Shown one piece after another: positions 9,206 to 25,617 of a stretch of DNA of 64,000 bases. Positions within the stretch are counted from its first letter, which is position 1, and each line of letters begins with the position of its first letter. The position numbers and the translations under genes were made by a program. The notes beneath the pieces are model-generated. The model saw nothing but the letters and a program-made list of their open reading frames with translations, did not search any database and was not told where the DNA came from. The stretch lies in NCBI GenBank assembly GCA_965240325.2, contig OZ251231.1, positions 558,001-622,000 of the forward strand, written 5' to 3'. Source of the DNA: Rebecca billardiae RCC1528 (lineage: Eukaryota > Protista > Haptophyta).

Positions 9206-11450
9206 TCAGAACAGCCGTCGGCCGCCGAGCGAGGGCGCGGCGGCCGCAGCCGCGGCGCCCGCGGCGCCCGCGCCGGCGGCGTCTCCGCCGCTGCCATCGC
9301 CGAGCACGCTCGCGACTATCAGCTCGACCTCCTTCTCGGACTCGCCGGCGGTCTTCCGGCGCATGAGCTTGGTCAGCCCGCCCGCGGCGCAGATGAACAG
9401 GCTCTGCACCGTCGACTCGAACGAGCCCGCCGAGAACCACCCCTGGATCGCGAGGAAGATGAAAGTGAACACAAACGTGAGCCAGAGCGCGAGCATCATG
9501 AGCGCGAGCGCGATGCGTGCGTCCGAGACGCCCATCGTCTCCGCGGCCTCCTCGATCATCTGCTCGACGAGGAAGTCCCAGCCGTCCTCGAACTGCGGGG
9601 CGGCACGCGCCGGCGGGAGGGCGGTGAGCGCGCGGCACGGCGGCGCGCGCGCGCGGGAGCGCCGGCTCGGGCTCGGCGCGGCGCGGCGGGGACGGGCGCG
9701 GCCGCGCGCGCCGCCCGGCCCGAGCAGGCGGCGGCGCGCGCGCCGGGCGCGGCGGTCTCACCTCCTTCTGGTCGATGAAGCCGTCGCCCGAGATGTCCAT
9801 GAAGGCGAAGAGCTGCTCGCGCCGCGCCTCCGAGAGCTGCAGCCCGAACCGCGTGAACATCTCGTCGAAGTCGGCGACGGCGAGCCGCGCCTCCGGCCGG
9901 CCGTGCGAAAGCATCGCAAAGACATCCGAAGGCAGTAGCGTCCCGTTGTCATCCTCCATCGCCTCAGGGAGGGCCTGCTCGGTGGCGATGACGGCGGGGG
10001 CCTCGGTCATGCCCGCGCGCGTCCCGCCCACCGCGCTCGCCGCGGGCAGCGCGCCGCCGCCGCCGCCGCCCGGCGGCACCCCCAGCGCCGTCGCCACGGG
10101 CATGCCGCAAGTCGAGTAAACATCCGATTGGTTGCAGTCGGGCATCGCGACTGTCGGCGGCGCGACCACGGCCGCCTCCTCGTCCGCGACGAGGACGGTC
10201 TGGCCGAGGACCTGGGTGCGCGTGAGCCCGACGTCGCGGAGCTGCGCCGCGCGCCGCTCGGCGGCGTACGCGTCCTTCGCGCGGCGCAGCACGCCGCGCA
10301 GCTGCGACTGGAACGCTGCGGCGAGCGCGGTGCGCAGCGCGCGCGCGGCAGTCATCAGCTCGCGCCGCGTCGTGAGCACAACTGCGATGCCGACGATGAT
10401 GGCGGTGCCGGCGGGCAGGAAGGAGTCGGGGTCGAGCACGGCGGCGAGCAGGCACCAGGTCAGCGCGAGCGTCACGTGGAGCAGCAGCACCGTCGAGTGC
10501 AGCAGCAGCAGCGCGGCGTACAGCTTGGCGCACGCGCGGTCGACGGCGCGCGCGCCCATGAGCAGAGCGGCGCGCGCGCGAGCGGCGACGCGGCGCGCGC
10601 CGCCGCCGTCCGCGGACGCGGACGCGCCGGCCGAGGCGCGCGGTGGTGCGGCGCGGCAGCACGCGGCGCCGACGAGCGCGCGCATCGAGAGCCCCGAGTA
10701 CTGCAGCAGCATGTGCACCAGCGTCAGCGCGGTGAAGGCGAGCAGCTCGACCACCTCCAGCCGCACGTACGGCAGAATCAGCGGCCAGTCGGTGAGAAGT
10801 GCGGACGTCCACGCGCCGCGGCGCGCGGACTGCCACGCGAAGAGCTGCCACCACTCGAGCGGGAGCGCGGGCGCGGTGGTGCGCGCGTACACCGACTGCG
10901 CGTACAGCGACGCCGCGAGCAGCACCAGCCCGGGGCCCACCAGCAGCCAGAAGTGAAGGCCGACCGCATAGGCCTCGAGACCAAAGTGCTGGCAGCTGAG
11001 AACGGGCGGCTGCGGCGCGCGTGCGCCGCCCGCCGCGGCGTCGGCGGGCTTGGCGCTGCCGCTGCCGGTGCTGCGCGCGGAGACGGGCGGCGGCGGCCCG
11101 GCGGACAGCAGCTCCATCCCGTACACCGTGCGCTGCCGCGACTCGAGCACGACCACGCCGAGCTCGCTGAGCGCGTGCGTGACCTCAACCTCGCGCGGCG
11201 AGCGCACGCCCTCCGCCCGGCACCAGGCGCGCAGCTCGGCCGCAAAGGAGCGGCCGTCGCCCTCGTCGACGGAGGAGAGGTACTGCGTCGAGCCGATGAC
11301 GAGCTCGCACCGCGCCGCGACGAACTGACGCACGTGCAGCGTCGCGTTGAGGAACGCGGTCGCCGGGTCTGGCTCCTCGGTGGGCGGCGCTTGGATGGCG
11401 GGCTGCGGCGGCGCCGCGTTGGCGCGCCGGCCTGAAAGCCAACCGAAAAG

Positions 11451-11483
<33 letters not shown>

Positions 11484-14400
11484 CTGCTTGCGCGTGGGCT
11501 GCTTCTGCAGGCCGCCCGCGCCGCTCATGCGGGTATTGCCGCTCGGCAGCGGCTCCTTCTCCATCGCGGCGAGCACGTCCGCGCGCAGCGGCAGGCGCGC
11601 CGGCGTCCCAGACGGCTCGGAGTGCGCGGCCGCGGCCGCGGCCGCTGAGTGCGTGCTCTGGTCTGTGCCTCCGCGCTGGCCTGGGCCCCCCGGGGCGGGC
11701 TCGTCGAAGGGCGAGCCGTTGCGCTCGCGCGGCGGGGGCGTGCCCGCGGGCTCCGTCTCGCCGGCGCCGCTCGAGGCCGCGCGCCCGCCGCTCTCGCCGC
11801 TCTCAGCGCGCGCGCGGCCGTTCGCGCCGCCCTCCTCGCCATCGCCGCCGCCGTCGGCCGCAGGGCGGGCGCCCGCGCTGTCGCGGCGCGGGCGCGCGCC
11901 GTCCGTCGCCCCGTCGGCGCCGCCGCCCTCGCCCTCGCCCGCCGCGCCGTCGCGCCCGCCCGCAGCCGCGTCGCCAAAGGCCGGGCTGGACGACGCCGCG
12001 CCGCCGCGCCCGAGCGCCGCCGGCCCGCCGCCGTCCGCGCCCTCCTCCTCCTCCGCCTTCCACCGAAGCCCTTGGAATCGAAGCAACGGCTCGACGGCGA
12101 CGCGGCAGTTGAACGTGCCGATGAGCATGCGCTGCACCGCGTCGCGGCTCGGCTCAATCTCGAGCCCGTACTGCCAGCAGTAGATCTCGTACGCCGAGAT
12201 CAGGTCGTCCATCGGCACCGTCGGGCGGCCATGTGCTTCGTCAATCCGCAGCTCGGTGCGCAGCTCGTGCGACGGCGTCGGGTCGCCAAAGCCGCGCGCG
12301 ATCGAGCCGCGCGCGGCGCGCCGCGTGCCCGGCAGCCGCCGCCCGAGCATCCGCCCGCGCGCCTTCGAGCCCTTGCCCCCCTGCCCCCCGCGCTCCGAGC
12401 CGCCGCGCGCGCCGCGCCCCACGCCCAGCGCCTCGTCGTCCAGCGCGCACATGTCTCTCACGAACGCCGGGAATGAGCGCACCGAGCGCCGCCGAACCGG
12501 GTCGACAAACAGCGTCGAGATGAAGGCGAGCGGCATCTCGAAGACGTTGAAGGTGGGCTCGCCGCCGCGCTGCTGCGACGAGCCCGCCTCCGCGCCGCCG
12601 CCGCCGCCATCCACGTGGTGCGGGCTGTTGTCGTCATGGCTTTTATTCTCATTATTCTGGCTCACGCCGTAATTCACGCCGTACGCAAACTCGAGCTCGA
12701 GGCCCTTCGAGCGGAGCACGCGCAGCTTGGACTGCTCGTCCTTCCACGTGCGGCGCATGAGCTCGCGCGCGGTGGAGTGCAGCGCGGTGAGCACGCCCAC
12801 CACCACGATCAGCGCCGAGAGCACCGACATGAGCACGGCCGCCTGCAGCGTGCGCGAGACGCGCGACGCGGACAGCGGCTGCACGCGCACGGTCGGCGGC
12901 ACAGCATGGCCGCCCGCCGTGCCGTCGGCGCCGTCCTCCGTGCGGATCACCTCGTACAGCGCGTGCGAGGTGCCCGTGAGGCCGAAGCGCGACATCCAGC
13001 TCTTCCGCCGCGGGCCCTCCACCTCGCCCTCGCCCGCCTCCTCCGCCACGTCCTCCTCCAGCCGCGCCGCCACCGAGCCGTCGTCGTCGCCCGGCGCCGC
13101 GGCCGCGCCCTCGTCCGGTTTCAGACTCTCGAGCATAGCCGCGTCGTCGGGCGAGACGACGAGGAGGAGCGAGCCGCGCGCGGAGCGGGTGGACTTGCCG
13201 TTGGAGAGAAGCGCGCGCTTGAGCCCGTCGTGGATCGCCGCGAGCCGCGCCGCGTGGTCCGCGTACACAGCCTCCTCGCACAGCGCGCGCTCGGATGACG
13301 ACGCGAGGGCGTCGGAGATATCAGCTGGGAGGTAGGCGGGCGCGCACGGCACCGCGCGCGTGGCGGCGGCGGTGGTGTTCTCGTCGCAGCCCGCGTGGTG
13401 GAAGCGCACGCGGTACCGGCGCAGCGCGGGCACGAGCGTGCCCAGCGAGAGGTGCGCGAGCGTCGCCGGCTCGAGCACGTGGTACACCTTCGGCAGCGCG
13501 CGGGCGCACAGCCGACGGTGGCGCGGCGCGGCGAGGGGCGCCCGAGCAGAGCCGTGGGCGGCGGCGGCGGCGGCGCGGCGCGGCGCGGCGCGGCGCGGGA
13601 AGGCTCGTGAGCGCGTGTTGGCGGGCGCGCGGCGCACGAGGCGGGCGCGGGCGTGGCACGCGCGGCGCACGCGCGGCGCGCGCGCGGCGCGCGCACCTGC
13701 GCCGTCGCGTACGCCCACATCGAGCGCGGCACGCCCGGCGCGGCCGGCACGTCGAAAATAATAAATCCGTGCTTTGTCGTACCCTGGTCGCCAAACACTG
13801 GCCCGACTTCGGTCTGCAGCCGCTTCGCGTCGGCGGGGATGATGCGGATGCCCGGGTAGCGCGCCTCGGGGGCGAGGAAGCTCGCCTCGCCGCCGCGCGG
13901 CGCGGCCGCCGACGACGCGTGCACCCGGCTCCCGCGCCACGCGCGCAGCGAGAGAGGCCACGCGGTGAGCTCGCGCGCGAGGCGGATGCCGACGCGCACG
14001 CTGCCGCCGGGCGCGTCGAGCGCGCTCCAGACGACGGGCACGGCGGCGGCGGCGGCGGCGGAGGCGGCGGCGGCGGCGGAGGCGGCGGCGCCGACGCTCG
14101 CGCCGACCACGTCCGCGAGGCTCGCCTCGAGCGCGAAGGCCGACGTGCCGTTCGTGCCGTTCGCCCGGAGCGACGCCGCAGTGTCGTTGGCGGCCGCGGG
14201 CGGCGGCGGCAGGCTGGGCCGGCGCGGCGCCGCGGGCGCGCCCGCCGGCCTCGTGCTCACGCCGCCCGTCGGCGTGACGAGCACGCTCGCGCGGCAGTCG
14301 GGGACGAGCTGCGTGAGGTTGAGCGCGAGCACGCGGCGCAGGAACTCGCCGTTCGACAGCAGGTTCGCGCGGTTGGCGAAGCCGCTCGGTGAGTCCGTGT

Positions 14401-15964
14401 CGGCGGCGCCGCCCGAGCCGGCCGACGCGGCGCTCGGCGCCCACGAGAAGATCTTCCACGAGAGCGGGTCGCACCACGTGCCGTAGGGGCAGGAGGCGGC
14501 GCCGCAGCAGATGGGCACGGAGGGCAGCACGCCGAGGAACTCGTCGCGGTCGATGAAGTGGTCCTTGTCCGTGTCGAACCGCGCGAGCATCTGGTTGGTG
14601 TAGAAGGGCGTGTCGCTGTTCTTCCATGAGCTGAACGTTCCGGAAGTTTCGCCCGGCAGCTCGAGCCCGCCCGCGCACGAGCCCGCCGCGGCGGCGCGCG
14701 AGGCGGGGGCGGCGGCGGGCGCGCGGCACGCGCGCGAGGCGTCGGGCGGCGCCGCCTCCGCCGCGACGCACTCGTAGTTCATCGGCTGGTGCACGCGCAG
14801 CTCGAGCGGGCGGGACTTGTGCGGCAGGGGTGCGTCAATGTTGATCATGCCGGAGCGCGTGCGCACGTCCACGGCCGCGCTCGGCCCGAGGGAGCACTCC
14901 TGGCAGAAGAGGCTGCCGCGGTCGAGCGAGGCGTACAGCGCGTGCGTCACCGCGAGCCGGCTCGCCACCACCTCGAGCGTCGGCCCCGTCACGTCCCAGA
15001 ACTGCCCGGCGTTGCCGCGCACGCGCAGCGTCTTGAGCCGCACGCCAAAGATGCCAAGCATCAGCGTCGGCGACGGGTCGTCGGGCTCCTGCGAGACGTG
15101 GAGCTCCTTGGCGCCGGTGGGCACGCGGATCGTCACGACGCACTGGTGCGCGCACCGCTGGAACGGCAGGCGGAAGCACGGGGAGACGGCGCGCGCCAGC
15201 ACGTGGTGCACGACGTCGTCGCCGCTGACGGCAGACCAGTGCACGCGCGTCGTCGCGCGCATGCCGCGCACGGACACCTTGCCGAGCACGCGCTGCGGCG
15301 CCGGCGAGGGCTCGGCGCCGGGCCTGGCGGTGCGCGTGGTCGGCAGCATCCGCACGTCGCACCCCGACACGTCCACCGCGAACGTGCGCGCCGGGTCGAA
15401 CGACTGCGTGAAGACGACCTCGTCGAAGGGCAGGTGCGCAAAGCGGATCGCGAGGCAGACCGAGACGATCGTGAGCGCCCAGCAGATGAGGCGCAGCGTG
15501 CGCTGCCGGCTGACGGCGGGCGGCGCGCGAGGGATGATCGGGCGGCGCGCGGGCGGCGGGCTCAGCGTCACGGCGCGGCTGCCGCCACCGCCGCCGGCGG
15601 CGGCGGTGGCCGCGGTGGCGGCGGCGCCGCCGGCGGCACCGGCGCCATCGCCGCCGCCGCCGCCGCCACCGCCGCCGGTGAGGACTTGCACCTGCTCCTG
15701 CACGTGCGCGACCACGTTCGCGAGCGGCTGGAAGATGCCCGGCAGCTCCATCGCCGAGGCCGCCGCGGGGGCCGCCTCCTCCGCCACGGGCGCGTCCGCG
15801 AGCGCGCCGCCCACCTCGGCCGCCGACGTCGGCGAGAGGCCGTCCGCGCGGTCGTCAGCGGGGTCCGCGCCGCTGCGCCGCTCGCTGCGCGAGACGCGAC
15901 CATCAAGCAGCTCGCGCGAGTCCTCGTGCCGCGCCGCCGGCATCGACGCGCACGCTTGACCCAT
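9206..15964 (-). CDS. Large (~2126 aa) polytopic membrane protein with two EF-hand motifs and two putative winged-helix domains; exons 15964-13697, 13487-9762, 9592-9206
   Basis: Three long ORF segments are joined by phase-0 GT-AG introns (13488-13696, 9593-9761). EF-hand loops DTDKDHFIDRDE and DISGDGFIDQKE (the second is followed by FEDGW after splicing). About 8-9 hydrophobic segments. Confidence 0.75.
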
Positions 15965-16726: not shown

Positions 16727-19700
16727 ATGACGCGGACGTCCGCGCTCGGGGCGCTCGCGCTCCTCACCTTCTCCGTGCCCTCCGCAGCCGCGGCCGGCGC
16801 GGTGCTCGCCGGCGTCACGCCAACGGGCGCGCCGCTCAGCGCGGCCGCGGCCGAGCTCGCGCTCACGCTGCGCGGCGCGGGCTTCGACTCGCTCGCCGAC
16901 GCGGGCGCCTTGAGCTGCGCGTTCGCGCCGGCTGAGGCTGGGGGCGGGTACGCGCTCGCGCCCAGCGCCACCACGCCCGCCACCCTCGTCGACGACCGCA
17001 CGGCCACCTGCGCGCCGCCGGCTGCGGGCGAGCTGGGCGCGCACGGCGCCGGTGCGTTTGCCCTTCGGCTGCTCGCGGCCGCCGGCGCGCGCGAGGTGCC
17101 CGCGCTCTTCGACGAGGTGAGCGTGACGATGTACAACACGGCGAGCGTGGTCGTCCACGCGCTGCACCCGCCCGCCGGCCCCGTGGGCGGGGGCACCGTC
17201 GTGACGCTCGAGGGGCGCGGGTTTGCCGATCACGGCGACGGCCAGCTGTGCTGCGTGCTGCCCGCCGTGGACGCGCGCGCGTGCGCCGCGCCCGCGGAGC
17301 TGCTGCCCAGCGTGAACGGCACGAGCCGCGCGCGCTGCACCACCCCGCCCGCGGCCGCCGCCGCGTCCGTGCCGCTCGAGCTCTCGCTGCGCGCGGGCGC
17401 GCCCAACTCGAGCACCGCCTCCGGCATGCAATTTCACTACTACGACGAGCCGACTGTTTCGTCGATCCTGCCGACGAGCGGCCCGTTCGGCGGCGGCACG
17501 GCGGTGCGCGGCTCGGGCTTCGACGCGCTGCTCGACGCGGGGCTCGACCCGCGCGAGCTGCTCCGCGTATCCTTCGGCGGCGCCGTCGCGCCCGCCGCGC
17601 AGTCGGTCGAGGAGGGCTCGGTCGTCGTCAACGCGCCCGGCCACGGCCTGCACGGCGCGGCGCAGGTTCGGGTCGCGCTGAACGGGCAGCAGTTCTCGCC
17701 GGCGGCGCAGGCGGAGGGTGGCGGCGTGCTCTTCACGCCGACCGGGCTCCACGCGCCCGCCCTCCTCCGCGCGCACCTCGGCGCCACCGCCACCACCCTC
17801 GAGCTCCACTTCGACGCGCAGCCGACCGACCGCGCGTCGATGCCGCCGGGCGCGTCCGCGTGCGCGCCGGTGCTCGACGACGCGACCCTCGCGCTCGTGC
17901 GCGGCGAGGGCGAGGCGGCGGCGGTGTGCGAGTGGGCGGGCGCGAGCCTGCTCGTCGCGCAGCTCGGCCCGCGCACCGCCCTCGCCCCCGGCGCCGCCGT
18001 CGGCGTGCGCGCCGGCGCCGTCGGGCCGGCGTCGTGCGCGCCCGCGTGTTCCGAGAACCTTCTCGCGGAAGCTCAGACGGCGACCGTGCCGCTCGACGCG
18101 CCGTGCGGCGAGGGCGGTGCGTGCCCCGCGCCGTCGGCGGCGCTGAGCGGCGCGCGCAGCGTCTCGTCGTGCGCCAACGAGACCCTCCGCCTCGACGCGA
18201 CCGCCTCCACCGGCGGCGGCGCCGCCTACCCACTCGAGTTCGACTGGCGCCTTGACCCGGCCACGACGGACGCGCCCGCGGCCGAGGCCGAGCGCGTGTC
18301 TGCGCAGCTGCGCGCGCTGCCGCCGACGGCGAGCGCGGCGCGCGTGGTGCTGCCGGCCGGCGGCGCGGCGTACGGCTTCGCCGTGCGCGTGCGCTCCGCC
18401 CTCGGCCCGCCCTCCGCGCCGGCGTTCTGGGCCGTCCAGCGCGTCGCGGCGCCCGCGCCCCAAGTGACTGTGGATGGGCCGGCGCGGCGCGCGGCGCGCG
18501 CGGACGTTGCACACGTGCTCAGCGCTGCGAGCACGCTGGCGGCGTGCTGGCCGGCGGGGATGTCGGCGGAGGTGGCGTACGCGTGGTCGGTGCTCGGCGT
18601 GACCGACGCGGAGACCGGAGAGCCCGTCGAGCTCGGCGCCGTCTCCGTCCCCGAGCTGAGCGCGCGCTCGGCTTCCGTGCGCGTGCCCGCGCGGTCGCTA
18701 AGTGGCGGCCATGCTTATGAGATCGGCGTCGTCGCGACCATGGCCGCGTGGCCCGCGGCGAGCGCGAACGCCAGCGTGACCCTCGTCGTGCGCGCGCAGC
18801 CGCTCCGCGCCGTCATCGCCGGCGGCGACCGCCGCGTCGGCGCCGCCGACGCGCTGCGCGTCGACGCGTCGGCGTCCGTCGACCCAGACGCGCCCGCCGC
18901 CGCCGACGCCGACGCCGCCGACGACGACGACGACGACGACGACGCCGACGCGGCGGCGGCGCCGCCGCCGCTGGCCTTCGCGTGGCGCTGGGTGCAGGGC
19001 ACGGCGGCGGGCGAGGCGGCGGAGGACGCGACGGTGGGGGTCGCCCTCGCCGCGCTCGCGGCCAACGCCACGGCCGCGCTCTTCGAGCTCCCGCCGGACT
19101 CGCTCCAGTCCGGCCGCTCGTACTTTCTCGAAGTTTCCGTCTCCGCGCCCGCGCGGCCAGAGGCGGCGCGCGCGCGCGCGGCCGTCGCGCTAGCAGTGGT
19201 GGCGGGCTCGGTGCCGACGATCCGCTTCGCGCCGCTCGAGGCGCCTGCGTACGTCTCCGACTTTGCGCTGCCCACCGCGCCGCGCCTCGCCATCCGCACC
19301 TCCCTCGACGACCCCGACGGCGGCAGCGCGCAGTGGGAGTTTGCATGGCGCGCGCTCGTGAATGGCGCGGGCGGCGCCGCGTCGGCCGCGCCGCTGAACC
19401 TGGCTGACACGTCGGCCGTGACGACGACGGGCGGCGTCGGGCCGTCGCTCGCGTTCCGGCGGGGCGCGCTCACGCCCGGCGCGACGTACACCTTCGAGCT
19501 CACCGCCTCCGCGCCCGGCCGAGCCTCCGCTCTCGGCTCCGTCACCGTCGCCATCCGCGCGCCGCCGTTCGCAGGCGGACTGTCGCTGGAGCCGAGTCGC
19601 GGCGTCGCGCTGACTACGGCGTTCGAGCTGAGCGCGCCGGGCTGGGTGCCGGCGGGCGACGGGCCGGAGGGGCTGCCGCTCGGGTACGCGTTCTCGCACG

Positions 19701-22700
19701 CGGGCACCCGTGCCGACGGCGGCGCGCTGCCCGCCGAGCCGCTCGGCCCCGAGCGCGCCTCCGCCCAGCTGCCCGAGCTGCTACTGCCCGCAGGCAACGG
19801 CACTGTGACTGTTCGCGTGTGCGACGCTCTGGGCGCGTGCGCGGCGCGCGGCACGGCGGTCGCGGTGGAGCCGCTGGGTGGCGAGGCGCGCGACGCGGTG
19901 CTCGCGACGCTCGCGGACGGCGCCGCGGTGCTCGCCGCCGCGGGCCGCGCCGACTCCGCCTACCGCCTCGTCCGCGCCATGGCCACAGAGCTCGACATCA
20001 GCGCGCAGACCAGCGGGGGCGCGGCCGGTCTCGCCGTCGACCGGAGCCGGCTGATCGAGCTGAGCGGGCTCGCGGCCGCGGCGGGCGGGACGGCGCTCAG
20101 CGCGGGCGCGCGCGCGCAGGCGGCGGCCGTGCTGCGCGCCGTGCTCAGCGGCGCGGCCGACGCCTCCGACGAGCTCGCCGCCGACGCGCGCTCCGGCGGC
20201 GCCGCGCAGGCCGCCGAGCTCGCCTCCCTCGCCGTCGAGACGGGCGTCGACGACGACACGGCGGCCAACTTGCTCGGCGCGGTCGACGGAGCGCTGAGCG
20301 GCGTGGCGGGCGCGGGCGGTGCCGACGCGGGCCGCGCGGTGCTGCCGGCGCCTCTGAGCCCCGACGAGGCCTCGAGCCTCCGCAACTCGGTCGAGTCCGC
20401 AGTCCGCGCGCTCGGCGCCGCGCTGCTTCCTGGCCTGGCGCGCGGCGAGGGCGCGGCGAGCGCGCGCGCGGGCTCGCTCTCCGTGACCGCGTCGCGCCAC
20501 GCGCCGAGCGCGCTCGGCGGCGCGAGCGTGAGCGCGCCGGGCGACCTCGGCTCCGTGCGCATCTCGGCGCAGGCCGTCGCGCGCGCGGTCGAGAGCAGCG
20601 CCACGCTCGGCGCAGACGAGGACACGGGCGGCGCCGGCGACGTCCGCGATCTGGCAGTTGTGCTCTGGTCCAGTGTGGCCAACGTGCACGAGCCGCCGGC
20701 CGCGGCGGGCTCGGCGGCGGACGGCACGGCACTGGGCGGGCTCGGCACGCGCGTGCTCTCGGCCACGGTCGTCTCGCCCACGCGCACGACCACCGCGCTC
20801 GAGGTGAGCGGGCTCGACGAGGCGGGTGCGCTCGTTCTGCGCATTCCGCGCGCCGCCGGCGCGACCGCCGACGACGCCGTCGACCAGTGCCTCTGGTGGA
20901 ACGAGGCCGAGGCGCGGTGGTCGGGCGCGGGGTGCGAGGCGCGGGCGGACGAGTCGACAGCCGACAGCCTCGTGTGCGCGTGCACGCACCTCACCGACTT
21001 CGCCGGCGTGAGGGTGCCGAAGGACCGGGACGAGGCCGACGAGCAGGTGAGCGCGGTCAAGCTGACGACCGCAGACGACGATGACGCCCGCACCGCGCTT
21101 GACGCGGACCGCGCCGCTCCGGGCAGCTCCCTCATCCACAGTGTGATCTACGTTCTCGCCGCACTCAACGCGCTCGGTCTCGCCATCGCGCTGCTCGCCG
21201 ACCGGCGCGGGCTCGCGAGGCTCGGCGCGGCGGGCGGCGGCGGCGGTCTCAAGGCGCTCCAAGGCGGCTCGGCGACAGGTACTCATCGGGGCACCCCGAT
21301 GTCGGGCTCGCGCACTCCGGCCGTCGGCGGCGCGGGCGCGGTGCAGCCGACGGCGCCCTCGGTCGGCAGCGCTGGCTCGCACGCATCGACGCCGGCCGGG
21401 AGCGCGCGGCTCTCCGGCCCGTCCGCCGCGGTCGGGCTGCGCCGGGCGCCGAAGCAGTCGGCGACCGTCGCGCCCATCGTCGATCCAGACGGCCGAACGG
21501 CGACGCAGCGCGTGCGCGACCGCGCGCGCGAGACGGCCGTCGTGCCTATCGGCGAGCACGGCGCGCGGGCGGACGACGACGGCGCGGCGCCGGGCGCGGA
21601 GGCGGCCGAGGGCGCGCCGGCGCCGGCTGCCGGCGCGAAGGCCCCAGCCACCGCGGACCCTCCGGCCGCGTCGGCGCACGCGTCCGCGCCCGGCGCCGCC
21701 GTTCCTGACCGCGCGGCCGCGCAGCAGCCGCAGCAGCAGCAGCAGCAGCAGCAGCAGCCGCAGCAGCAGCAGCAGCAGCAGCAGCGCCGCGCCCCCGGGA
21801 CCCGGACGGCATCGCTCACGCTCTCCTCCTGGTCGTCCCGCTCGTCCAGCCTTCTCGACTCGACGCGGCTGTGGCGCGCGGCGGAGCGCGCCGCGTCCCT
21901 GCACCCGGTACTTGCGCTGTTCCGCGCATCAGACGGTCTCATCCGGCGCACCGAGCTCGCTCAGAGCCTCTTCAACCTGCTCGCCCTGCAGCTGGTGCTG
22001 GAGGCTCTCGTCTTCGAGTCCGGGCAGCAGACGCGCGCCGACGGCGACGGCGCGACGCGCGTCGAGCCGGAGCCGCCGGGGCTGCTCACGCTGCTGTTGT
22101 ACGCGCTGATCGTCGGCGCGATCGCCGCGCCCGCGCCGCCCCTCTTCCGGCTCATCTGGTGGGCGGGGCGCTCGTCCGCGCGCGAGCCGCCGTCGTGGCT
22201 CCTCTTCCGAGTCCTCCGCGCCGGCCCGCGCGCGCACGGCGCCGGCGGACTGGCAGAGGAGGGCGCGCGCTCGCGCGCCGGCGCCGGCGACGACGACGAG
22301 CTCGGCGTCCCGCCCATCTCGCGCTGGGCGCAGCGCGCGGCGGGCGGGCGCACGAGACTCACCGACGCGGAGGTGGCGACAATCCGTGACGCGCTCACGC
22401 GCGCCGAGCTCGCCATGCTCACCGAGCGCTTCGCCTCGCACGCCGCGCCGGCCGAGACGGGCGAGCCGATGCCGACGCTGTCCGAGGACGGCGTGCGCGG
22501 CATGCTCGACGCCGCCGACGAGCCGCTGCCGCCGGGGCTCGCGCGGCGGCTCACGCGCGAGCTCGACATCGGCCACGACGGCCAAGTCGACGAGGCGGAC
22601 TTTGTCGCGTGGTACGCGCGGCGCAAGCAGCTCGAGCGCGCGGCGGAGCCGCTGCAGCGCGCGCTGCGCCGCTGCGCGCCGCCCGACGCGGTGCGCGGCG

Positions 22701-22975
22701 CGTGCGCGTGGCTGTGCATGCTCGGCATCTTCGCCGGGCTGTGCATCACGCTGCTCATCCTCACCGCCGCGCTCGGCCCGGAGAATGCCGAGGCGATGGT
22801 CTCGTCGTGGGCGCTGGCCGTCAGCTACTCGCTCGTGCTGCAGACGCCGGTCACGCTCGTGCTCACGCGCTGCCTGCACGAGCTCATCGACGGCTGCGTG
22901 AGCCTCAACCTCGTCATGCAGCTGGGCGCGTGCGCCGAGCGCACGGGCTCGGCCATCTGCTTCTTGTTCCAGTGA
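16727..22975 (+). CDS. Polycystin-1/REJ-like receptor (signal peptide, IPT/TIG repeats, REJ region, GPS, ~5 TM, EF-hand)
   Basis: Signal peptide; IPT-like motifs (LHPPAGPVGGGTVVTLEGRGF, ILPTSGPFGGGTAVRGSGF); REJ-like LRVDASASVDPD and GVALTTAFELSAPGW; canonical GPS CLWWNEAEARWSGAGC...CACTHLTDF; EF loop DIGHDGQVDEADF. Single 2082-aa ORF. Confidence 0.85.
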   Translation: MTRTSALGALALLTFSVPSAAAAGAVLAGVTPTGAPLSAAAAELALTLRGAGFDSLADAGALSCAFAPAEAGGGYALAPSATTPATLVDDRTATCAPPAAGELGAHGAGAFALRLLAAAGAREVPALFDEVSVTMYNTASVVVHALHPPAGPVGGGTVVTLEGRGFADHGDGQLCCVLPAVDARACAAPAELLPSVNGTSRARCTTPPAAAAASVPLELSLRAGAPNSSTASGMQFHYYDEPTVSSILPTSGPFGGGTAVRGSGFDALLDAGLDPRELLRVSFGGAVAPAAQSVEEGSVVVNAPGHGLHGAAQVRVALNGQQFSPAAQAEGGGVLFTPTGLHAPALLRAHLGATATTLELHFDAQPTDRASMPPGASACAPVLDDATLALVRGEGEAAAVCEWAGASLLVAQLGPRTALAPGAAVGVRAGAVGPASCAPACSENLLAEAQTATVPLDAPCGEGGACPAPSAALSGARSVSSCANETLRLDATASTGGGAAYPLEFDWRLDPATTDAPAAEAERVSAQLRALPPTASAARVVLPAGGAAYGFAVRVRSALGPPSAPAFWAVQRVAAPAPQVTVDGPARRAARADVAHVLSAASTLAACWPAGMSAEVAYAWSVLGVTDAETGEPVELGAVSVPELSARSASVRVPARSLSGGHAYEIGVVATMAAWPAASANASVTLVVRAQPLRAVIAGGDRRVGAADALRVDASASVDPDAPAAADADAADDDDDDDDADAAAAPPPLAFAWRWVQGTAAGEAAEDATVGVALAALAANATAALFELPPDSLQSGRSYFLEVSVSAPARPEAARARAAVALAVVAGSVPTIRFAPLEAPAYVSDFALPTAPRLAIRTSLDDPDGGSAQWEFAWRALVNGAGGAASAAPLNLADTSAVTTTGGVGPSLAFRRGALTPGATYTFELTASAPGRASALGSVTVAIRAPPFAGGLSLEPSRGVALTTAFELSAPGWVPAGDGPEGLPLGYAFSHAGTRADGGALPAEPLGPERASAQLPELLLPAGNGTVTVRVCDALGACAARGTAVAVEPLGGEARDAVLATLADGAAVLAAAGRADSAYRLVRAMATELDISAQTSGGAAGLAVDRSRLIELSGLAAAAGGTALSAGARAQAAAVLRAVLSGAADASDELAADARSGGAAQAAELASLAVETGVDDDTAANLLGAVDGALSGVAGAGGADAGRAVLPAPLSPDEASSLRNSVESAVRALGAALLPGLARGEGAASARAGSLSVTASRHAPSALGGASVSAPGDLGSVRISAQAVARAVESSATLGADEDTGGAGDVRDLAVVLWSSVANVHEPPAAAGSAADGTALGGLGTRVLSATVVSPTRTTTALEVSGLDEAGALVLRIPRAAGATADDAVDQCLWWNEAEARWSGAGCEARADESTADSLVCACTHLTDFAGVRVPKDRDEADEQVSAVKLTTADDDDARTALDADRAAPGSSLIHSVIYVLAALNALGLAIALLADRRGLARLGAAGGGGGLKALQGGSATGTHRGTPMSGSRTPAVGGAGAVQPTAPSVGSAGSHASTPAGSARLSGPSAAVGLRRAPKQSATVAPIVDPDGRTATQRVRDRARETAVVPIGEHGARADDDGAAPGAEAAEGAPAPAAGAKAPATADPPAASAHASAPGAAVPDRAAAQQPQQQQQQQQQPQQQQQQQQRRAPGTRTASLTLSSWSSRSSSLLDSTRLWRAAERAASLHPVLALFRASDGLIRRTELAQSLFNLLALQLVLEALVFESGQQTRADGDGATRVEPEPPGLLTLLLYALIVGAIAAPAPPLFRLIWWAGRSSAREPPSWLLFRVLRAGPRAHGAGGLAEEGARSRAGAGDDDELGVPPISRWAQRAAGGRTRLTDAEVATIRDALTRAELAMLTERFASHAAPAETGEPMPTLSEDGVRGMLDAADEPLPPGLARRLTRELDIGHDGQVDEADFVAWYARRKQLERAAEPLQRALRRCAPPDAVRGACAWLCMLGIFAGLCITLLILTAALGPENAEAMVSSWALAVSYSLVLQTPVTLVLTRCLHELIDGCVSLNLVMQLGACAERTGSAICFLFQ
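21722..21784 (+). repeat. (CAG)n tract encoding interrupted polyglutamine
   Basis: CAG run with two CCG interruptions, encoding QQPQQQQQQQQQPQQQQQQQQ in the polycystin-like CDS. Confidence 0.95.
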
Positions 22976-23542
22976 GGCGTCGGCGTGAACGGCGTAAGCG
23001 CTCGTCCGACGTGTCAGTCAGTCAGTCACGAGCCCAGGGCGGGCAAGGGTTGGTAACGTCGGCGCCGATGATGCGTGATGATCCGATCTATGGCCGATGA
23101 TGATGCGCTCGTCATGCTGATGCCTGCTTGCCGCGCAGTGTCGTCGTCGTCCGATTATTTATTGCTGCATCATCGTCATCGATCATATCATCATCGTCAT
23201 CGCGTCGCGTCATCATCAGCGCCAGCATGCAGTGATGTCACAGTTCTGATGAGTTAACGGCTACGCACCGGCACTAGCTTTAAATGAGTAGCTACTCGAT
23301 CGCCGCCGTCACGGCGTCAGCCGTCAGTCCCCGTCTCGCCTCTCATCAGTCTGACGACGAATCTGATGATGGTCAGTAGTCGGCCTCGGCTCGGGCTCGG
23401 CCTTTGCTCGATCGCGCGGTCTCTGATGAGAGCAGTCAGCAGATGATTCGTCAGACTTATGAATAGACGAGCGAGGACGAGTCGTCTGCCGCTGACGAGT
23501 GACGACGCACGACGATGACGCGACTCTGACACGCGACGCGCC

Positions 23543-25617
23543 TCAGTCCAGCTCGGATGCCTCGATGCTCCTGTTCGCCTGCCAGACAGCCGAGTTGCAC
23601 TTGAACCCGCTGCCAAAGCCAATCTGCCAGATCTTGTCGCCACGGCTGCGCGGCGTCCGTGTCGCGTGTCGCGCGGAGCGGCGGGGCGGCGGGGCGCACG
23701 GTGAGCCGAGCTTCCCAGCGAGCCCCACCCGCGCCGCGCCGCGCCGCGCGCGCACCGGACCCGCCCGGACTTCTCGAGGAAGTCCATTTCGTACCACACG
23801 GACGCGGAGGAGACGTTGCCCCAGCGCCACAGCGAGTAGCGCGAGGGCTCGAGGTGGTGGTCTGTGAGCGAGAGGTTCTTCTGGATGGCGTCGAGGACGG
23901 CGCGGCCGCCCGTGTGGATGCAGAAGTGGCTCACCGCCTTGGTGAAGTCGGGCACGTACCCCTTCACCCCTTTCAGCTTGAGCCACTTGCGCGCGACGTA
24001 GCTGGCGAGGAAGCGCGCCTGCTCGGAGACGGGCAGGATCAGCGGACCGAGCACCGTGATGTTCGTCTTCATCGCCTCGCCCGCGCAGTCCATCACGTTC
24101 TTCTGCAGCCGCACGCCGACGTGCCCCGCCTTGTCCTCCTCCTGGAACACGCACCGGTACGCGCCGTCGTCGCCGCCCTTGTGCGTGCGCACCGTGTGCA
24201 GCAGCGTGTACTTGGCGCGCCGCCTGTCCGCGTGCCGCCCAGAGAGCAGCACCGCCGCGCCGCCCATCCGGAAGAGCGTGTTCGAGATGAGCATCGACTT
24301 CTCGTTGCCCTGGTAGAAGTTCTGCGTGATGTTCTCCGTCGAGATCACCAGCGCGCGCTTGCGCGGGTACACCTGCGCGGCGCGGCCGGCAGGGCGGCGG
24401 GCGCGTGAGCGAGCCGCAGTCGGAGCCGCAGAGGGCGGCGGCAGCGCCGCTGCGCCCGCGCCGCCGTGCGCGCTCGCGCGCGGCTCGGGCGTGGGTGGGC
24501 GGCGCGTGCAGAGGTGCACGGCCGGCGAGGCGCGGGAGGGGCGGCACGGCACACCACGCGCCGCACGGCGCACACGCCCCGCCCCGGCTGCGCCGGCGCA
24601 CGCGCCCCTGGCCCAGGAAGCGGCGCGCGCACACACGCACCTGCAGCAAGTCCTTTGCGAGATGTACTGAGATGATGCCCGCCGAGCAGCCCATCCCGCC
24701 GAGCGAGTAGGACTGGATCGAGTCCTTCATCTTGTAGTGGTTGATCACGATCGCCGCGAGCGACGGCGTCGGGTTGAAGAGCGAGCAGTTGATCACCAGA
24801 ATGTCGATCTGCGCCGCAGCGGGCGCACAGGCAGTCCAGCGCGCAGGCGAGCGTGCGGGGCCGCGGCGGCGGTGAGCGATCACGCGCGCCGGCCGCGGGG
24901 ATGCCGTGCTCGCTGCGTGCGGCGCGGCGCGCGGGCGCCGAGGCTCACATCGGACGGCTTGGTGCGCGTCTTGCTGAACAGCTCGTCGCACGTCGAGAAG
25001 ATCACGCGCTCGAACTCGGTGCGAGCCGCCGCCATCGAGAAGTCGAACTCACACTCGCCCTTCTTGTAGTCGCGGATGCCTGGCGGGAAGTAGCACTTGT
25101 CCGAGATCTGATTGCGCTCGAAGAGCTTCATCTGGAAGTCGACCGACTCCTTGGTGAAGTTGCCGCACTCGGTCACGGTCTCGCGGAAGAAGTCGGCGGT
25201 CGCGCACAGCCGACCGTCGTCCTCCTCGCGCGGCATGCGCCACGTCGCAAAGTCGACCAGGTACACGGGGCGCGGGCGGCGCAGGGCGTAGACGGTGAAG
25301 AAGAAGCCGGCGACGAGGGTGAAGCTCGCCGTGTATACCACCTCGAGGTGCAGCGAGTTGCGCAGCTCCACCAGGTCGTCCACGGTCACCTTTGGCGCGT
25401 GGATCACCGCCGCCGCCATGAGCAGCGCGACCGCGAGGATCTGCGTGCTGCGGATGACGAGCGGGTGCACGCCCTCGTCGAGGACGCGCAGCGCCTCGCG
25501 CATCTTCACATGCGTCCGCCCCGGGTAGGTGTACGCATCCCGCGCACTCCCCCCGGCGTACGGCGAGAGCGGCGGCTCCTCCGCGGCACCGCCTCGATTC
25601 GTGGCGCGGGACGACAT
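23543..25617 (-). CDS. KCS: 3-ketoacyl-CoA synthase (FAE1/KCS-type very-long-chain fatty acid elongase condensing enzyme); exons 25617-24949, 24808-24641, 24372-23756, 23645-23543
   Basis: Motifs [35 protein letters not shown] (catalytic Cys), [27 protein letters not shown] (His), WGNVSSAS (Asn) and [20 protein letters not shown]. Three GT-AG introns in consistent phase. Confidence 0.95.

What the first reader, a model, noticed from the sequence alone, without database searches (positions are those of the whole stretch)
9206..15964. Polytopic EF-hand membrane protein carrying two apparent RFX/D5-type winged-helix domains: a possible membrane-tethered, Ca2+-linked nucleic-acid binder
Seen: the spliced ~2126-aa product has a TM, a Cys-rich region with an EF-hand loop (DTDKDHFIDRDE), a TM, a long soluble loop, a bundle of TMs, a second EF-hand (DISGDGFIDQKE-F) and two final TMs. 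The soluble loop holds two related segments: FVRDMC...TVPMDDLISAYEIYCWQYGLEIEPSRDAVQRMLIGTF...RFQGLRWK (~12465-12058) and VRQFVAARCEL...FAAELRAWCRAEGVRSPREVEVTHALSELGV...RTVYGMEL (~11335-11107). Established: the pattern F(L/V)xxxC..LYxxYxx(W/F)CxxxG...L...YxG(I/L)xL characterises the winged helix of RFX transcription factors and of D5/P4-type primase-helicase C-termini. Inference: tandem winged helices inside an EF-hand-bearing multi-pass membrane protein is an architecture I do not recognise. It could be a membrane-tethered or cleavable regulator, or a domesticated viral domain.
Basis: partly seen in the sequence, partly recalled or inferred. Interest (0 to 1): 0.8.

Follow-up and report, generated by a model that had tools for sequence, protein, structure and literature searches.

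The report
Membrane protein with tandem winged helices
A real, conserved gene of a GC-rich marine alga encodes a large multi-pass membrane protein. Its internal loop carries two copies of a DNA-binding-type "winged helix" otherwise known from viral and plasmid replication helicases and RFX transcription factors, a combination I found described nowhere.

Summary
A three-exon, 2126-aa gene on the minus strand (9206-15964) is colinear with four paralogues. Intron-less paralogues validate both splice junctions. The family has 205 database relatives in haptophytes, dinoflagellates, stramenopiles and a chlorophyte, all unnamed or auto-named.

The two segments are homologous repeats (hhalign 97.2%). 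AlphaFold models both with pLDDT above 90.

- An exhaustive search of 48,161 PDB chains ranks RFX5, RFX1 and the phage P4 origin-binding domain first (Z 8.2, 7.8, 6.8).
- The ESM-Atlas shape search ranks Pox_D5/DUF5906 clusters first.
- Profile-profile comparison with a Pox_D5 alignment I built gives 91.5% (shuffled controls at most 2.1%).
- No Pfam threshold is met, and Foldseek is not significant.

Topology puts the loop in the cytoplasm: homologues carry a thrombospondin repeat between TM1 and TM2, the positive-inside rule agrees, and an EF-hand pair follows four more TMs.

Both domains are flanked by TMs, so a releasable transcription factor is unlikely. Nucleic-acid binding at the membrane is plausible (conserved basic helix 3 and wing in copy 1) but untested.

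The scan noted the same reading on a paralogue (s1-365453). I rate it a new variant of a known kind, of moderate to high interest.

The parts
13697..15964 (-). Exon 1 (756 aa): low-complexity N-terminus, TM1, most of the Cys-rich ectodomain
   Evidence: ORF and splice donor read directly. It aligns with 4 paralogues at 33-39% identity over up to about 700 aa and with database homologues.
15431..15496 (-). TM1 (residues 157-178). The basic flank is on the N-terminal side, so the N-terminus is cytoplasmic.
   Evidence: Kyte-Doolittle peak of 1.95. The positive-inside reading comes from the sequence itself.
14540..14575 (-). EF-hand-like 12-residue Ca2+ loop (DTDKDHFIDRDE) in the ectodomain
   Evidence: Pfam EF-hand_1 E 5.6e-4, 19.7 bits, below the cut-off of 25.4. 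The same weak hit occurs at the same position in 4 paralogues.
13488..13696 (-). Intron 1 (GT..AG, 209 nt, very GC-rich)
   Evidence: Sequence. Paralogues L021, L025 and L026 read straight through the junction.
9762..13487 (-). Exon 2 (1242 aa): end of the ectodomain, TM2, the loop with two winged helices, a four-TM bundle, most of the EF-hand pair
   Evidence: A profile of this exon finds 205 relatives.
12777..12848 (-). TM2 (exon 2 residues 214-237), followed by a strongly basic stretch (cytoplasmic side)
   Evidence: Kyte-Doolittle peak of 2.71. Homologues carry a TSP1 repeat between TM1 and TM2, which marks that region as extracellular.
12057..12479 (-). Winged helix 1. H1 and beta1 (FVRDMCALD) lie at 12438-12479, a lineage-specific disordered insert at about 12231-12440, and the beta-H2-H3-wing core at 12057-12221.
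   Evidence: AlphaFold pLDDT is 87-97 in the core. The VIA-align top hits RFX5 (Z 8.2), RFX1 (Z 7.8) and P4 OBD (Z 6.8) span this part. hhalign against a Pox_D5 alignment gives 80.6%. K/R columns are conserved on the end of H3 and on the wing.
11367..12056 (-). Low-complexity Gly/Ala/Pro-rich spacer (about 230 aa) between the two domains. It is mostly absent from homologues.
   Evidence: pLDDT below 50. Homologues have only about 20-40 aa here.
11103..11366 (-). Winged helix 2 (H1 VRQFVAARCEL, then H2-H3-wing ending RTVYGMEL)
   Evidence: pLDDT is 86-98 in the joint model and averages 86.9 alone. VIA-align top hit is RFX5, Z 6.1. The top three ESM-Atlas clusters carry Pox_D5. hhalign against Pox_D5 gives 91.5%, P 8.5e-7, with controls at most 2.1%. 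It is homologous to copy 1 at 97.2%.
10368..10970 (-). Bundle of four TM helices (TM3-TM6) with conserved polar residues (E, H, Q, D-P)
   Evidence: Hydropathy peaks. Family-wide conservation. No Pfam family.
9530..9938 (-). Cytoplasmic EF-hand pair. The first loop is degenerate in this copy. The second (DISGDGFIDQKE, 9762-9797) is canonical and is split from its exit helix by intron 2 (9593-9761).
   Evidence: Sequence. Homologues score EF-hand_7 at 39-52 bits against a cut-off of 30 at the same position. Paralogues give weak hits.
9206..9592 (-). Exon 3 (128 aa plus stop): EF-hand exit helix, TM7 (9446-9514), a weakly hydrophobic possible TM8 (9362-9415), Ala/Gly-rich tail
   Evidence: It is 47-62% identical to the paralogues and aligns with 49 database proteins.

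Best explanation
The gene encodes a member of an uncharacterised protist family of polytopic membrane proteins.

Shown:
- The order is N-terminus, TM1, Cys-rich ectodomain, TM2, two tandem winged-helix domains, four TMs, EF-hand pair, one or two TMs.
- The two winged helices are duplicates of one domain.
- Their nearest structures are the RFX DNA-binding domain and the origin-binding C-terminal domain of P4/D5-type SF3 primase-helicases (Pfam Pox_D5). With the latter they also share detectable profile similarity.

Inferred:
- The ectodomain is outside the cell or in a lumen. The winged-helix pair and the EF-hand pair face the cytoplasm.
- The domain was captured from a mobile-element or viral replication protein and duplicated.
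- The pair stays tethered to the membrane at both ends. It is not released as a transcription factor.
- There it acts as a docking module for double-stranded nucleic acid. Copy 1 keeps a conserved basic helix 3 and wing, the DNA-contact elements of RFX. Copy 2 is more degenerate.
- Ca2+ binding to the EF-hand pair on the same face modulates the protein.

My confidence in the architecture and fold class is about 0.85-0.9. My confidence in nucleic-acid binding at the membrane is about 0.4-0.45.
For: Gene model and paralogues. Family: 205 hits, 33 of them at E<=1e-30, with full-length homologues of 1200-2087 aa. They come from Diacronema lutheri, Pavlovales sp., Symbiodinium, Durusdinium, Tetraselmis, Florenciella and Hondaea. 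Repeat homology: hhalign of A6 against A7 gives 97.2%, E 3.8e-11, over 88 columns. Fold: AlphaFold pLDDT above 90 in both cores, pTM 0.51. VIA-align against 48,161 PDB representatives ranks 8zjr_M RFX5 at Z 8.2 (80 of 82 residues aligned), 1dp7_P RFX1 at Z 7.8 (75 of 76) and 1ka8_A P4 OBD at Z 6.8. ASFV PrimPol tail (5.1) and vaccinia D5 698-782 (4.8) follow. Copy 2 alone again has RFX5 on top, Z 6.1. The ESM-Atlas top three clusters carry PF03288, DUF5906 and D5_N, with TM 0.56-0.50. Sequence kinship: hhalign of A7 against my Pox_D5 alignment gives 91.5%, P 8.5e-7, over 74 columns. A6 gives 80.6% against the nine non-P4 sequences. Reversed and shuffled controls reach at most 2.1% and 10.6%. 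The commonest weak per-member Pfam hits are Pox_D5 and Cdc6_C. Topology: TSP1 repeats lie between TM1 and TM2 in homologues, and an EF-hand_7 pair above the cut-off follows the bundle. Basic columns on H3 and the wing of copy 1 are. Published work groups the RFX DBD, the P4 OBD, the pRN1 ORF904 wH and the ASFV C962R tail as one DNA-binding winged-helix class (PMC2777425, PMC10516667).
Against: No HMM-to-sequence search reaches significance. That covers Pfam, NCBIfam, PHROGs and PDB sequences. Foldseek E-values are 0.7 or higher. By the tool's own calibration, the VIA Z values of 6-8 are in the range often seen for unrelated small folds. The isolated copy 2 model lost its beta wing in DSSP. The window's own two cores are nearly uncharged (-1 and 0), against family means of +3.5 and +2.7. 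Many winged helices bind proteins; cullin WHB and Slx4 CCD also appear among the hits. A plasma-membrane location offers no obvious DNA partner. Basic residues next to a membrane could equally bind lipid head groups. Topology is inferred, not measured. No RNA-seq run was listed for this organism.
Confidence: 0.5

Rival explanations
1. The tandem winged helices are real but have lost nucleic-acid binding. They serve as a protein-protein or intramolecular regulatory platform, for example docking the EF-hand pair, a cytoskeletal or signalling partner, or lipid head groups. They would couple the ectodomain and Ca2+ to the four-TM bundle of a receptor- or channel-like protein.
For: Protein-binding winged helices (cullin WHB, Slx4 CCD, ESCRT-II, Cdt1) are among the structural hits at Z 4-5. 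The window's own cores are near neutral. Copy 2 has few conserved basic columns. The pair is tightly tethered between TM2 and TM3 in all members. pTM 0.51 for a half-disordered 480-aa model suggests the two domains pack together. The TM bundle has conserved polar residues.
Against: The closest structures and the only sequence-level relatives (RFX, P4 OBD, Pox_D5) bind DNA wherever their binding has been tested. Copy 1 keeps K/R at the end of H3 and on both wing strands across the family.
Confidence: 0.35
2. It is a membrane-tethered transcription factor. A signal such as ligand or Ca2+ triggers proteolysis that frees the winged-helix pair, which then moves to the nucleus.
For: It has a DNA-binding-type domain on the cytoplasmic side of a membrane protein. 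Long disordered linkers in this copy could hold cleavage sites.
Against: The pair lies between TM2 and TM3, so release needs two cuts. In compact homologues the linkers are only about 20-40 aa, and copy 2 ends about 15-20 aa before TM3. No nuclear localisation signal, activation domain or dimerisation domain was detected by Pfam.
Confidence: 0.07
3. The resemblance to RFX/D5 winged helices is convergent or a modelling artefact, and the segments are an unrelated small alpha/beta domain.
For: All HMM-to-sequence searches fail. Foldseek is not significant. Z values of 6-8 are common for small domains.
Against: These are the PDB search without Foldseek, the ESM-Atlas shape search and the controlled profile-profile comparison. 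The targets are covered almost end to end (80 of 82, 75 of 76 residues).
Confidence: 0.06

Closest known systems
Pox_D5 domain (PF03288): origin-binding winged helix at the C-terminus of P4 alpha / D5-type SF3 primase-helicases (PDB 1ka8; also the ASFV C962R tail 8wvz and vaccinia D5 8apl)
   Same: Same fold, with Z 6.8 over 77 of 100 residues. The ESM-Atlas top clusters carry it. The motif layout is the same: an F-x-x-x-C helix, then a Y/F-x-x-W/F-C helix, then a G-hydrophobic-x-L/W wing. Profile-profile similarity is 91.5% for copy 2.
   Different: It is not attached to a helicase, and it sits between transmembrane helices of a eukaryotic membrane protein. It is duplicated in tandem. In this copy there is a 70-aa insert between H1/beta1 and the core. 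It is below the Pfam threshold.
RFX DNA-binding domain (PF02257; RFX1 1dp7, RFX5 8zjr)
   Same: It is the best structural match of both copies: Z 8.2 and 7.8 in the joint model, Z 6.1 for copy 2 alone, covering nearly the whole RFX domain. Copy 1 keeps basic residues on H3 and the wing, the RFX DNA-contact elements (PMC2777425).
   Different: No sequence-level match to PF02257, either in the protein or anywhere in the genome. No RFX dimerisation or activation regions. It is a membrane protein, not a soluble nuclear one. From memory, not tested here: canonical RFX factors are reported mainly from animals, fungi and amoebozoans, not from these algal lineages.
MAN1 / LEM2 / Heh1-Heh2 MSC winged helix of inner-nuclear-membrane proteins (from memory, not tested here)
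   Same: It is a precedent for an integral membrane protein that carries a winged helix beside a TM and contacts DNA or chromatin at a membrane.
   Different: It is a different winged-helix subclass and was not among the top 50 structural hits. It is a single copy after the last TM. It has no EF-hands, no large Cys-rich ectodomain and no four-TM bundle.
Membrane-tethered transcription factors (SREBP, ATF6, plant NTL, yeast Mga2/Spt23; from memory)
   Same: A DNA-binding-type domain is held at a membrane on the cytoplasmic side.
   Different: In those proteins the DNA-binding part is at a free terminus and one cleavage event releases it. Here it is an internal loop with TMs on both sides.

Membership tests
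Pox_D5 (PF03288) / P4-type origin-binding winged helix | Match to the Pfam model above its gathering score (21.4 bits) | tested here: not met
   There is no hit for the window segments. The best among 38 family members is E 0.028. There is no PF03288 match in the whole genome at E<=1.
Pox_D5 (PF03288) / P4-type origin-binding winged helix | Winged-helix fold superposable on P4 OBD / D5-type tail domains | tested here: met
   1ka8_A scores Z 6.8 at rmsd 2.4 over 77 residues, at rank 3 of 48,161. 8wvz_A scores Z 5.1 and 8apl_A Z 4.8. The Atlas top three clusters carry PF03288.
Pox_D5 (PF03288) / P4-type origin-binding winged helix | Profile-level sequence similarity over the whole domain | tested here: met
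   hhalign of A7 against 15 Pox_D5 sequences gives 91.5%, P 8.5e-7, over 74 columns. A6 gives 80.6% against 9 of those sequences. Shuffled and reversed controls reach at most 2.1% and 10.6%. The comparison set is small and was built by me.
Pox_D5 (PF03288) / P4-type origin-binding winged helix | Position directly C-terminal to an SF3 helicase core (DUF5906) | tested here: not met
   There is no helicase domain in any exon or homologue. The domains are flanked by TM2 and TM3.
RFX_DNA_binding (PF02257) | Match to the Pfam model above its gathering score (27 bits) | tested here: not met
   There is no hit in the protein, in the family members, or in the genome at E<=1.
RFX_DNA_binding (PF02257) | RFX-type winged-helix fold | tested here: met
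   8zjr_M scores Z 8.2 (80 of 82 residues) and 1dp7_P Z 7.8 (75 of 76). Copy 2 alone scores Z 6.1 and 5.0 against the same two chains.
RFX_DNA_binding (PF02257) | X-box DNA binding through the wing and helix 3 | not testable with these tools
   The only evidence is conserved K/R columns on H3 and the wing of copy 1.
EF-hand Ca2+-binding pair | Canonical 12-residue loop (D-x-D/N/S-x-D/N/G ... E) flanked by helices, in a pair | tested here: met
   The loop DISGDGFIDQKE is canonical in the sequence. The partner loop is degenerate in this copy. Homologues score EF-hand_7 at 39-52 bits against a cut-off of 30 at the same place.
EF-hand Ca2+-binding pair | Pfam score above the cut-off in the window's own protein | tested here: not met
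   The ectodomain loop scores 19.7 bits against 25.4. The C-terminal loop is split by intron 2, and the joined protein was not searched.
Proteolytically released membrane-tethered transcription factor | DNA-binding domain at a free end, with a membrane anchor on one side only | tested here: not met
   There are TMs on both sides in the window, the paralogues and the homologues.

The most novel reading that the evidence does not exclude
A widespread protist family of Ca2+-responsive membrane proteins holds double-stranded nucleic acid at a membrane. It does so through a tandem winged helix captured from a viral or plasmid replication-origin-binding domain. It might tether chromatin or organelle DNA, or sense or sequester the DNA of infecting giant viruses. 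That would be a kind of membrane-anchored DNA binder without a described counterpart.
Probability: 0.3. Interest if true: 0.85.

Novelty: new variant of a known kind. Interest (0 to 1): 0.62.

Why it matters
RFX/P4/D5-class winged helices are known as soluble DNA binders in replication initiation and in ciliary or MHC gene control. Here the class is found duplicated and wedged between transmembrane helices, next to an EF-hand pair. The proteins carrying it are conserved across haptophytes, dinoflagellates, stramenopiles and a chlorophyte. This extends where such domains can work. It also points to an ancient capture of a mobile-element replication domain by a host membrane protein. Finally, it gives a testable handle (purified domains with and without Ca2+) on a large, wholly uncharacterised family of marine-protist surface proteins. 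If the domains bind nucleic acid, the family would link extracellular or Ca2+ signals to DNA or RNA at a membrane.

Tried and rejected
- **Word-index protein search** of exon 2: no hit. Low-complexity words probably swamped the candidate list.
- **ESM-Atlas feature search** of the C-terminal half: nothing usable.
- **Family and sequence libraries.** Pfam, NCBIfam and PHROGs scans of the two segments and the paralogue copies gave nothing relevant. So did PDB sequence searches with shallow (A3, A4) and deep (A6, A7) profiles.
- **Shallow repeat comparison.** hhalign of the five-paralogue profiles A3 against A4 gave only 2.6%. The repeat relationship appeared only with 56-sequence profiles.
- **Foldseek.** No match against PDB or BFVD reached E<=0.001. 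In the PDB searches the top weak rows are ORC1, RFX and forkhead winged helices.
- **RNA evidence.** No sequencing run was listed.
- **P4 alpha C-terminus searches** against phage records and IMG/VR gave almost only near-identical P4-like copies. These were useless for a diverse profile. I used PF03288 hits in sampled bacterial genomes instead.
- **Receptor-plus-effector pairing with the neighbour: rejected.** The REJ/GPS neighbour belongs to a family with at least about 95 loci in this genome, and none lies near the other paralogues.
- **Net charge as a test of DNA binding: rejected.** The P4 OBD segment is itself about neutral.
Full report
**Observation.** The minus strand between 9206 and 15964 carries three open segments that join through two canonical introns.
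- Exon 1 is 13697-15964. Its donor reads CAG|GTGCGC and the acceptor reads GAAG|GTGTAC.
- Exon 2 is 9762-13487. Its donor reads GAG|GTGAGA and the acceptor reads CGCAG|TTCGAG.
- Exon 3 is 9209-9592, with the stop at 9206-9208.

The window's own genome (72 Mb in 41 contigs, GC about 70%) holds four colinear paralogues, on contigs C1, C26, C5 and C10. In three of them the exon 1/exon 2 junction is a continuous frame. In two of them the exon 2/exon 3 junction is continuous. These intron-less paralogues validate the spliced model without RNA data. No RNA run was listed for this organism.

**Anatomy.** Hydropathy and the sequence give the following order.
- A low-complexity N-terminus.
- TM1 (residues 157-178), with a basic N-terminal flank.
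- An ectodomain of about 790 aa. Its exon 1 part has 14 cysteines and four NxS/T sites; the exon 2 part adds three cysteines and one site. It also holds a canonical-looking EF loop, DTDKDHFIDRDE. That loop gives weak Pfam hits, below the cut-off but conserved in position in all four paralogues.
- TM2, followed by a strongly basic stretch.
- A loop of about 600 aa.
- Four TM helices with conserved polar residues.
- A coiled region and an EF-hand pair whose second loop, DISGDGFIDQKE|F, is split by intron 2.
- One strong TM, one weak one, and an Ala/Gly tail.

**Family.** A profile of exon 2 built from the paralogues (A2) was scored against 1.84 billion representative proteins.
- It found 205 proteins at E<=1e-3 and 33 at E<=1e-30. 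Many are full length, 1200-2087 aa.
- These align with exon 1 and exon 3 as well.
- Named sources are Diacronema lutheri and Pavlovales sp. CCMP2436 (the closest, so the window is probably from a haptophyte), Symbiodinium sp. KB8, Durusdinium trenchii, Tetraselmis sp. GSL018, Florenciella parvula and Hondaea fermentalgiana. Many more come from metagenome and transcriptome assemblies.
- All are 'hypothetical', 'EF-hand domain-containing' or auto-named 'Calmodulin'.
- No paper in the library mentions their accessions.

Pfam on six full-length homologues finds only two things. One is an EF-hand pair above the cut-off just before the last TMs. The other is a thrombospondin type 1 repeat between TM1 and TM2.

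The TSP1 repeat marks that region as extracellular or luminal. With the positive-inside flanks, this puts the TM2-TM3 loop in the cytoplasm. After four more TMs, it puts the EF-hand pair there too. The two placements are mutually consistent, but they are inferred rather than measured.

**The two segments.** Both are conserved in every paralogue and across the family. My local hidden-Markov scans find segment 1 in about 85 of the retrieved proteins. They find segment 2 downstream of it in about 75, usually only 20-40 residues apart.

The window's 230-aa Gly/Ala/Pro spacer is therefore a lineage-specific low-complexity insertion. So is the 70-aa insert inside segment 1.

With five sequences per side the two segments were not significantly alike (2.6%). 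With 56-sequence alignments (A6, A7), hhalign gives 97.2%, E 3.8e-11, over 88 columns, from the F-V-x-x-x-C helix to the G-L-R-W strand. They are tandem copies of one domain.

**Fold.** AlphaFold2 on the window's whole loop, with a 38-sequence alignment, gives pLDDT of 87-98 in both cores and pTM 0.51. The rest is disordered. Each copy reads helix, strand, (insert), strand, helix, helix, beta hairpin.
- Foldseek finds nothing significant. Its top weak rows are the ORC1 winged helix, the RFX DNA-binding domain and forkhead domains.
- The exhaustive VIA-align search of 48,161 PDB representatives does not depend on Foldseek. It ranks RFX5 first (8zjr_M, Z 8.2, rmsd 2.6, 80 of 82 residues). RFX1 is second (1dp7_P, Z 7.8, 75 of 76). 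The phage P4 origin-binding domain is third (1ka8_A, Z 6.8, 77 of 100).
- Lower in that list come cullin WHB, Slx4 CCD, the ASFV primase-helicase tail (Z 5.1), ORC/Cdc6/MCM8 winged helices and vaccinia D5 residues 698-782 (Z 4.8).
- The aligned ranges of the top three rows start in copy 1. I read them as matches mainly to copy 1, but I could not inspect coordinates.
- Copy 2 folded alone (pLDDT 86.9) again has RFX5 on top (Z 6.1). The score is lower and DSSP assigns no wing strands. Foldseek is again not significant.
- A shape search of the ESM Atlas with that model returns, as its three nearest cluster types, clusters carrying PF03288 Pox_D5 and DUF5906; the third also carries D5_N. These are mostly viral, with TM 0.56-0.50 and rmsd 2.4-2.9.

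The tool warns that Z values of 6-8 are common for small domains, so no single number is decisive.

Published work already groups the RFX DBD, the P4 alpha origin-binding domain, the pRN1 ORF904 winged helix and the ASFV C962R tail as one class of DNA-binding winged helix (PMC2777425, PMC10516667).

**Sequence-level kinship.** No HMM-to-sequence search links the segments to anything. Neither PF03288 nor PF02257 matches anywhere in this genome. Scanning 38 family members one by one, the commonest weak Pfam hits are Pox_D5 (best E 0.028) and Cdc6_C.

I therefore built a Pox_D5 alignment of 15 sequences. It holds phage P4 alpha and six-frame translations at PF03288 hits in sampled bacterial genomes.
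- Local hhalign of the copy 2 family against it gives 91.5%, P 8.5e-7, over 74 columns covering the whole domain.
- The copy 1 family gives 80.6% against the nine non-P4 sequences and 29.8% against all 15.
- Reversed and 24 column-shuffled controls reach at most 2.1% (copy 2) and 10.6% (copy 1).

I conclude that the domain is a divergent relative of the Pox_D5/P4 origin-binding winged helix. RFX is its best solved structural neighbour.

**Function.** This part is inferred.
- Copy 1 keeps K/R in at least 60% of family members at the end of helix 3 and at four positions along the wing strands, one of them just after the final conserved Trp. The window's copy retains these residues. Those are the DNA-contact elements in RFX (PMC2777425).
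- Copy 2 has fewer such columns.
- Net charge is uninformative. Family means are +3.5 and +2.7 and the window's cores are -1 and 0, but the P4 OBD segment is itself about neutral.
- In every member the pair is bounded by TM2 and TM3, and copy 2 ends 15-45 residues before TM3. Release as a soluble transcription factor would need two cuts and is unlikely.

My best reading is a membrane-retained tandem winged helix on the cytoplasmic face that docks double-stranded nucleic acid. The EF-hand pair on the same face would provide Ca2+ input, and the large ectodomain would provide an external input. I give the nucleic-acid step about 0.4-0.45. The main rival, at about 0.35, is a purely protein- or lipid-binding regulatory module.

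**Surroundings.** The divergently transcribed neighbour (16727-22975, plus strand, one 2082-aa ORF) has TIG, REJ and GPS domains. By eye it also has TMs and an EF loop. REJ genes number at least about 95 loci in this genome, and none lies near the other paralogues. The head-to-head pairing noted by another first-stage entry (s1-336988) is therefore probably coincidental.

A sixth, divergent family member lies at G000:C5:1408626-1420064, within a 3813-aa open frame. It has the same order of TM, tandem winged helix and TM bundle. The scan's notes hold the same reading for a paralogue on another contig (s1-365453).

**Verdict.** The winged-helix classification is supported at the fold level and, for Pox_D5, at the profile level. 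The membrane-tethered nucleic-acid-binder idea remains a plausible, untested inference. The cleavable-regulator idea is unlikely. The architecture is undescribed in the literature searched, and I class it as a new variant of a known kind.

Noticed in passing
window 16727-22975 (+): The divergently transcribed neighbour is a single 2082-aa ORF. It has IPT/TIG repeats, a REJ domain (E 6.7e-38), a GPS motif, TM helices and a C-terminal EF-like loop, so it resembles polycystin-1. REJ-domain genes are hugely expanded in this genome: at least about 95 loci, some in open frames of up to 21,132 aa. None lies near the other paralogues of the winged-helix gene.
   Followed up: partly
G000:C5:1408626-1420064 (-), loci L205/L206: A sixth, divergent family member lies in a 3813-aa open frame. 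It has the same order of TM, ectodomain, TM, tandem winged helix and TM bundle, plus a very long C-terminal extension with no Pfam hit. Its second winged helix has no insert between H1 and the core.
   Followed up: partly
window 12231-12440 and 11367-12056 (-): Long in-frame Gly/Ala/Arg/Pro-rich low-complexity insertions sit inside and between the conserved domains. Most homologues lack them. They are modelled as disordered. Similar expansions occur elsewhere in the protein.
   Followed up: partly
window 15950-15964 (-): The predicted protein starts MGQAC. A glycine at position 2 followed by a cysteine hints at N-terminal acylation, which would fit a cytoplasmic N-terminus. This was not tested, and the start codon is not confirmed by transcripts.
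   Followed up: no
window 23317-24636 (-): Part of this ORF's translation looks like a plant-type 3-ketoacyl-CoA synthase (FAE1/KCS-like), flanked by out-of-frame Arg/Ala-rich text that suggests introns. I judged this by eye only.
   Followed up: no
homologues P0007, P0010, P0014, P0021, P0034: Some homologues, mostly from unnamed metagenome and transcriptome sources, carry a thrombospondin type 1 repeat in the ectodomain. The window's copy has lost it or never had it; that region is an alanine run.
   Followed up: partly
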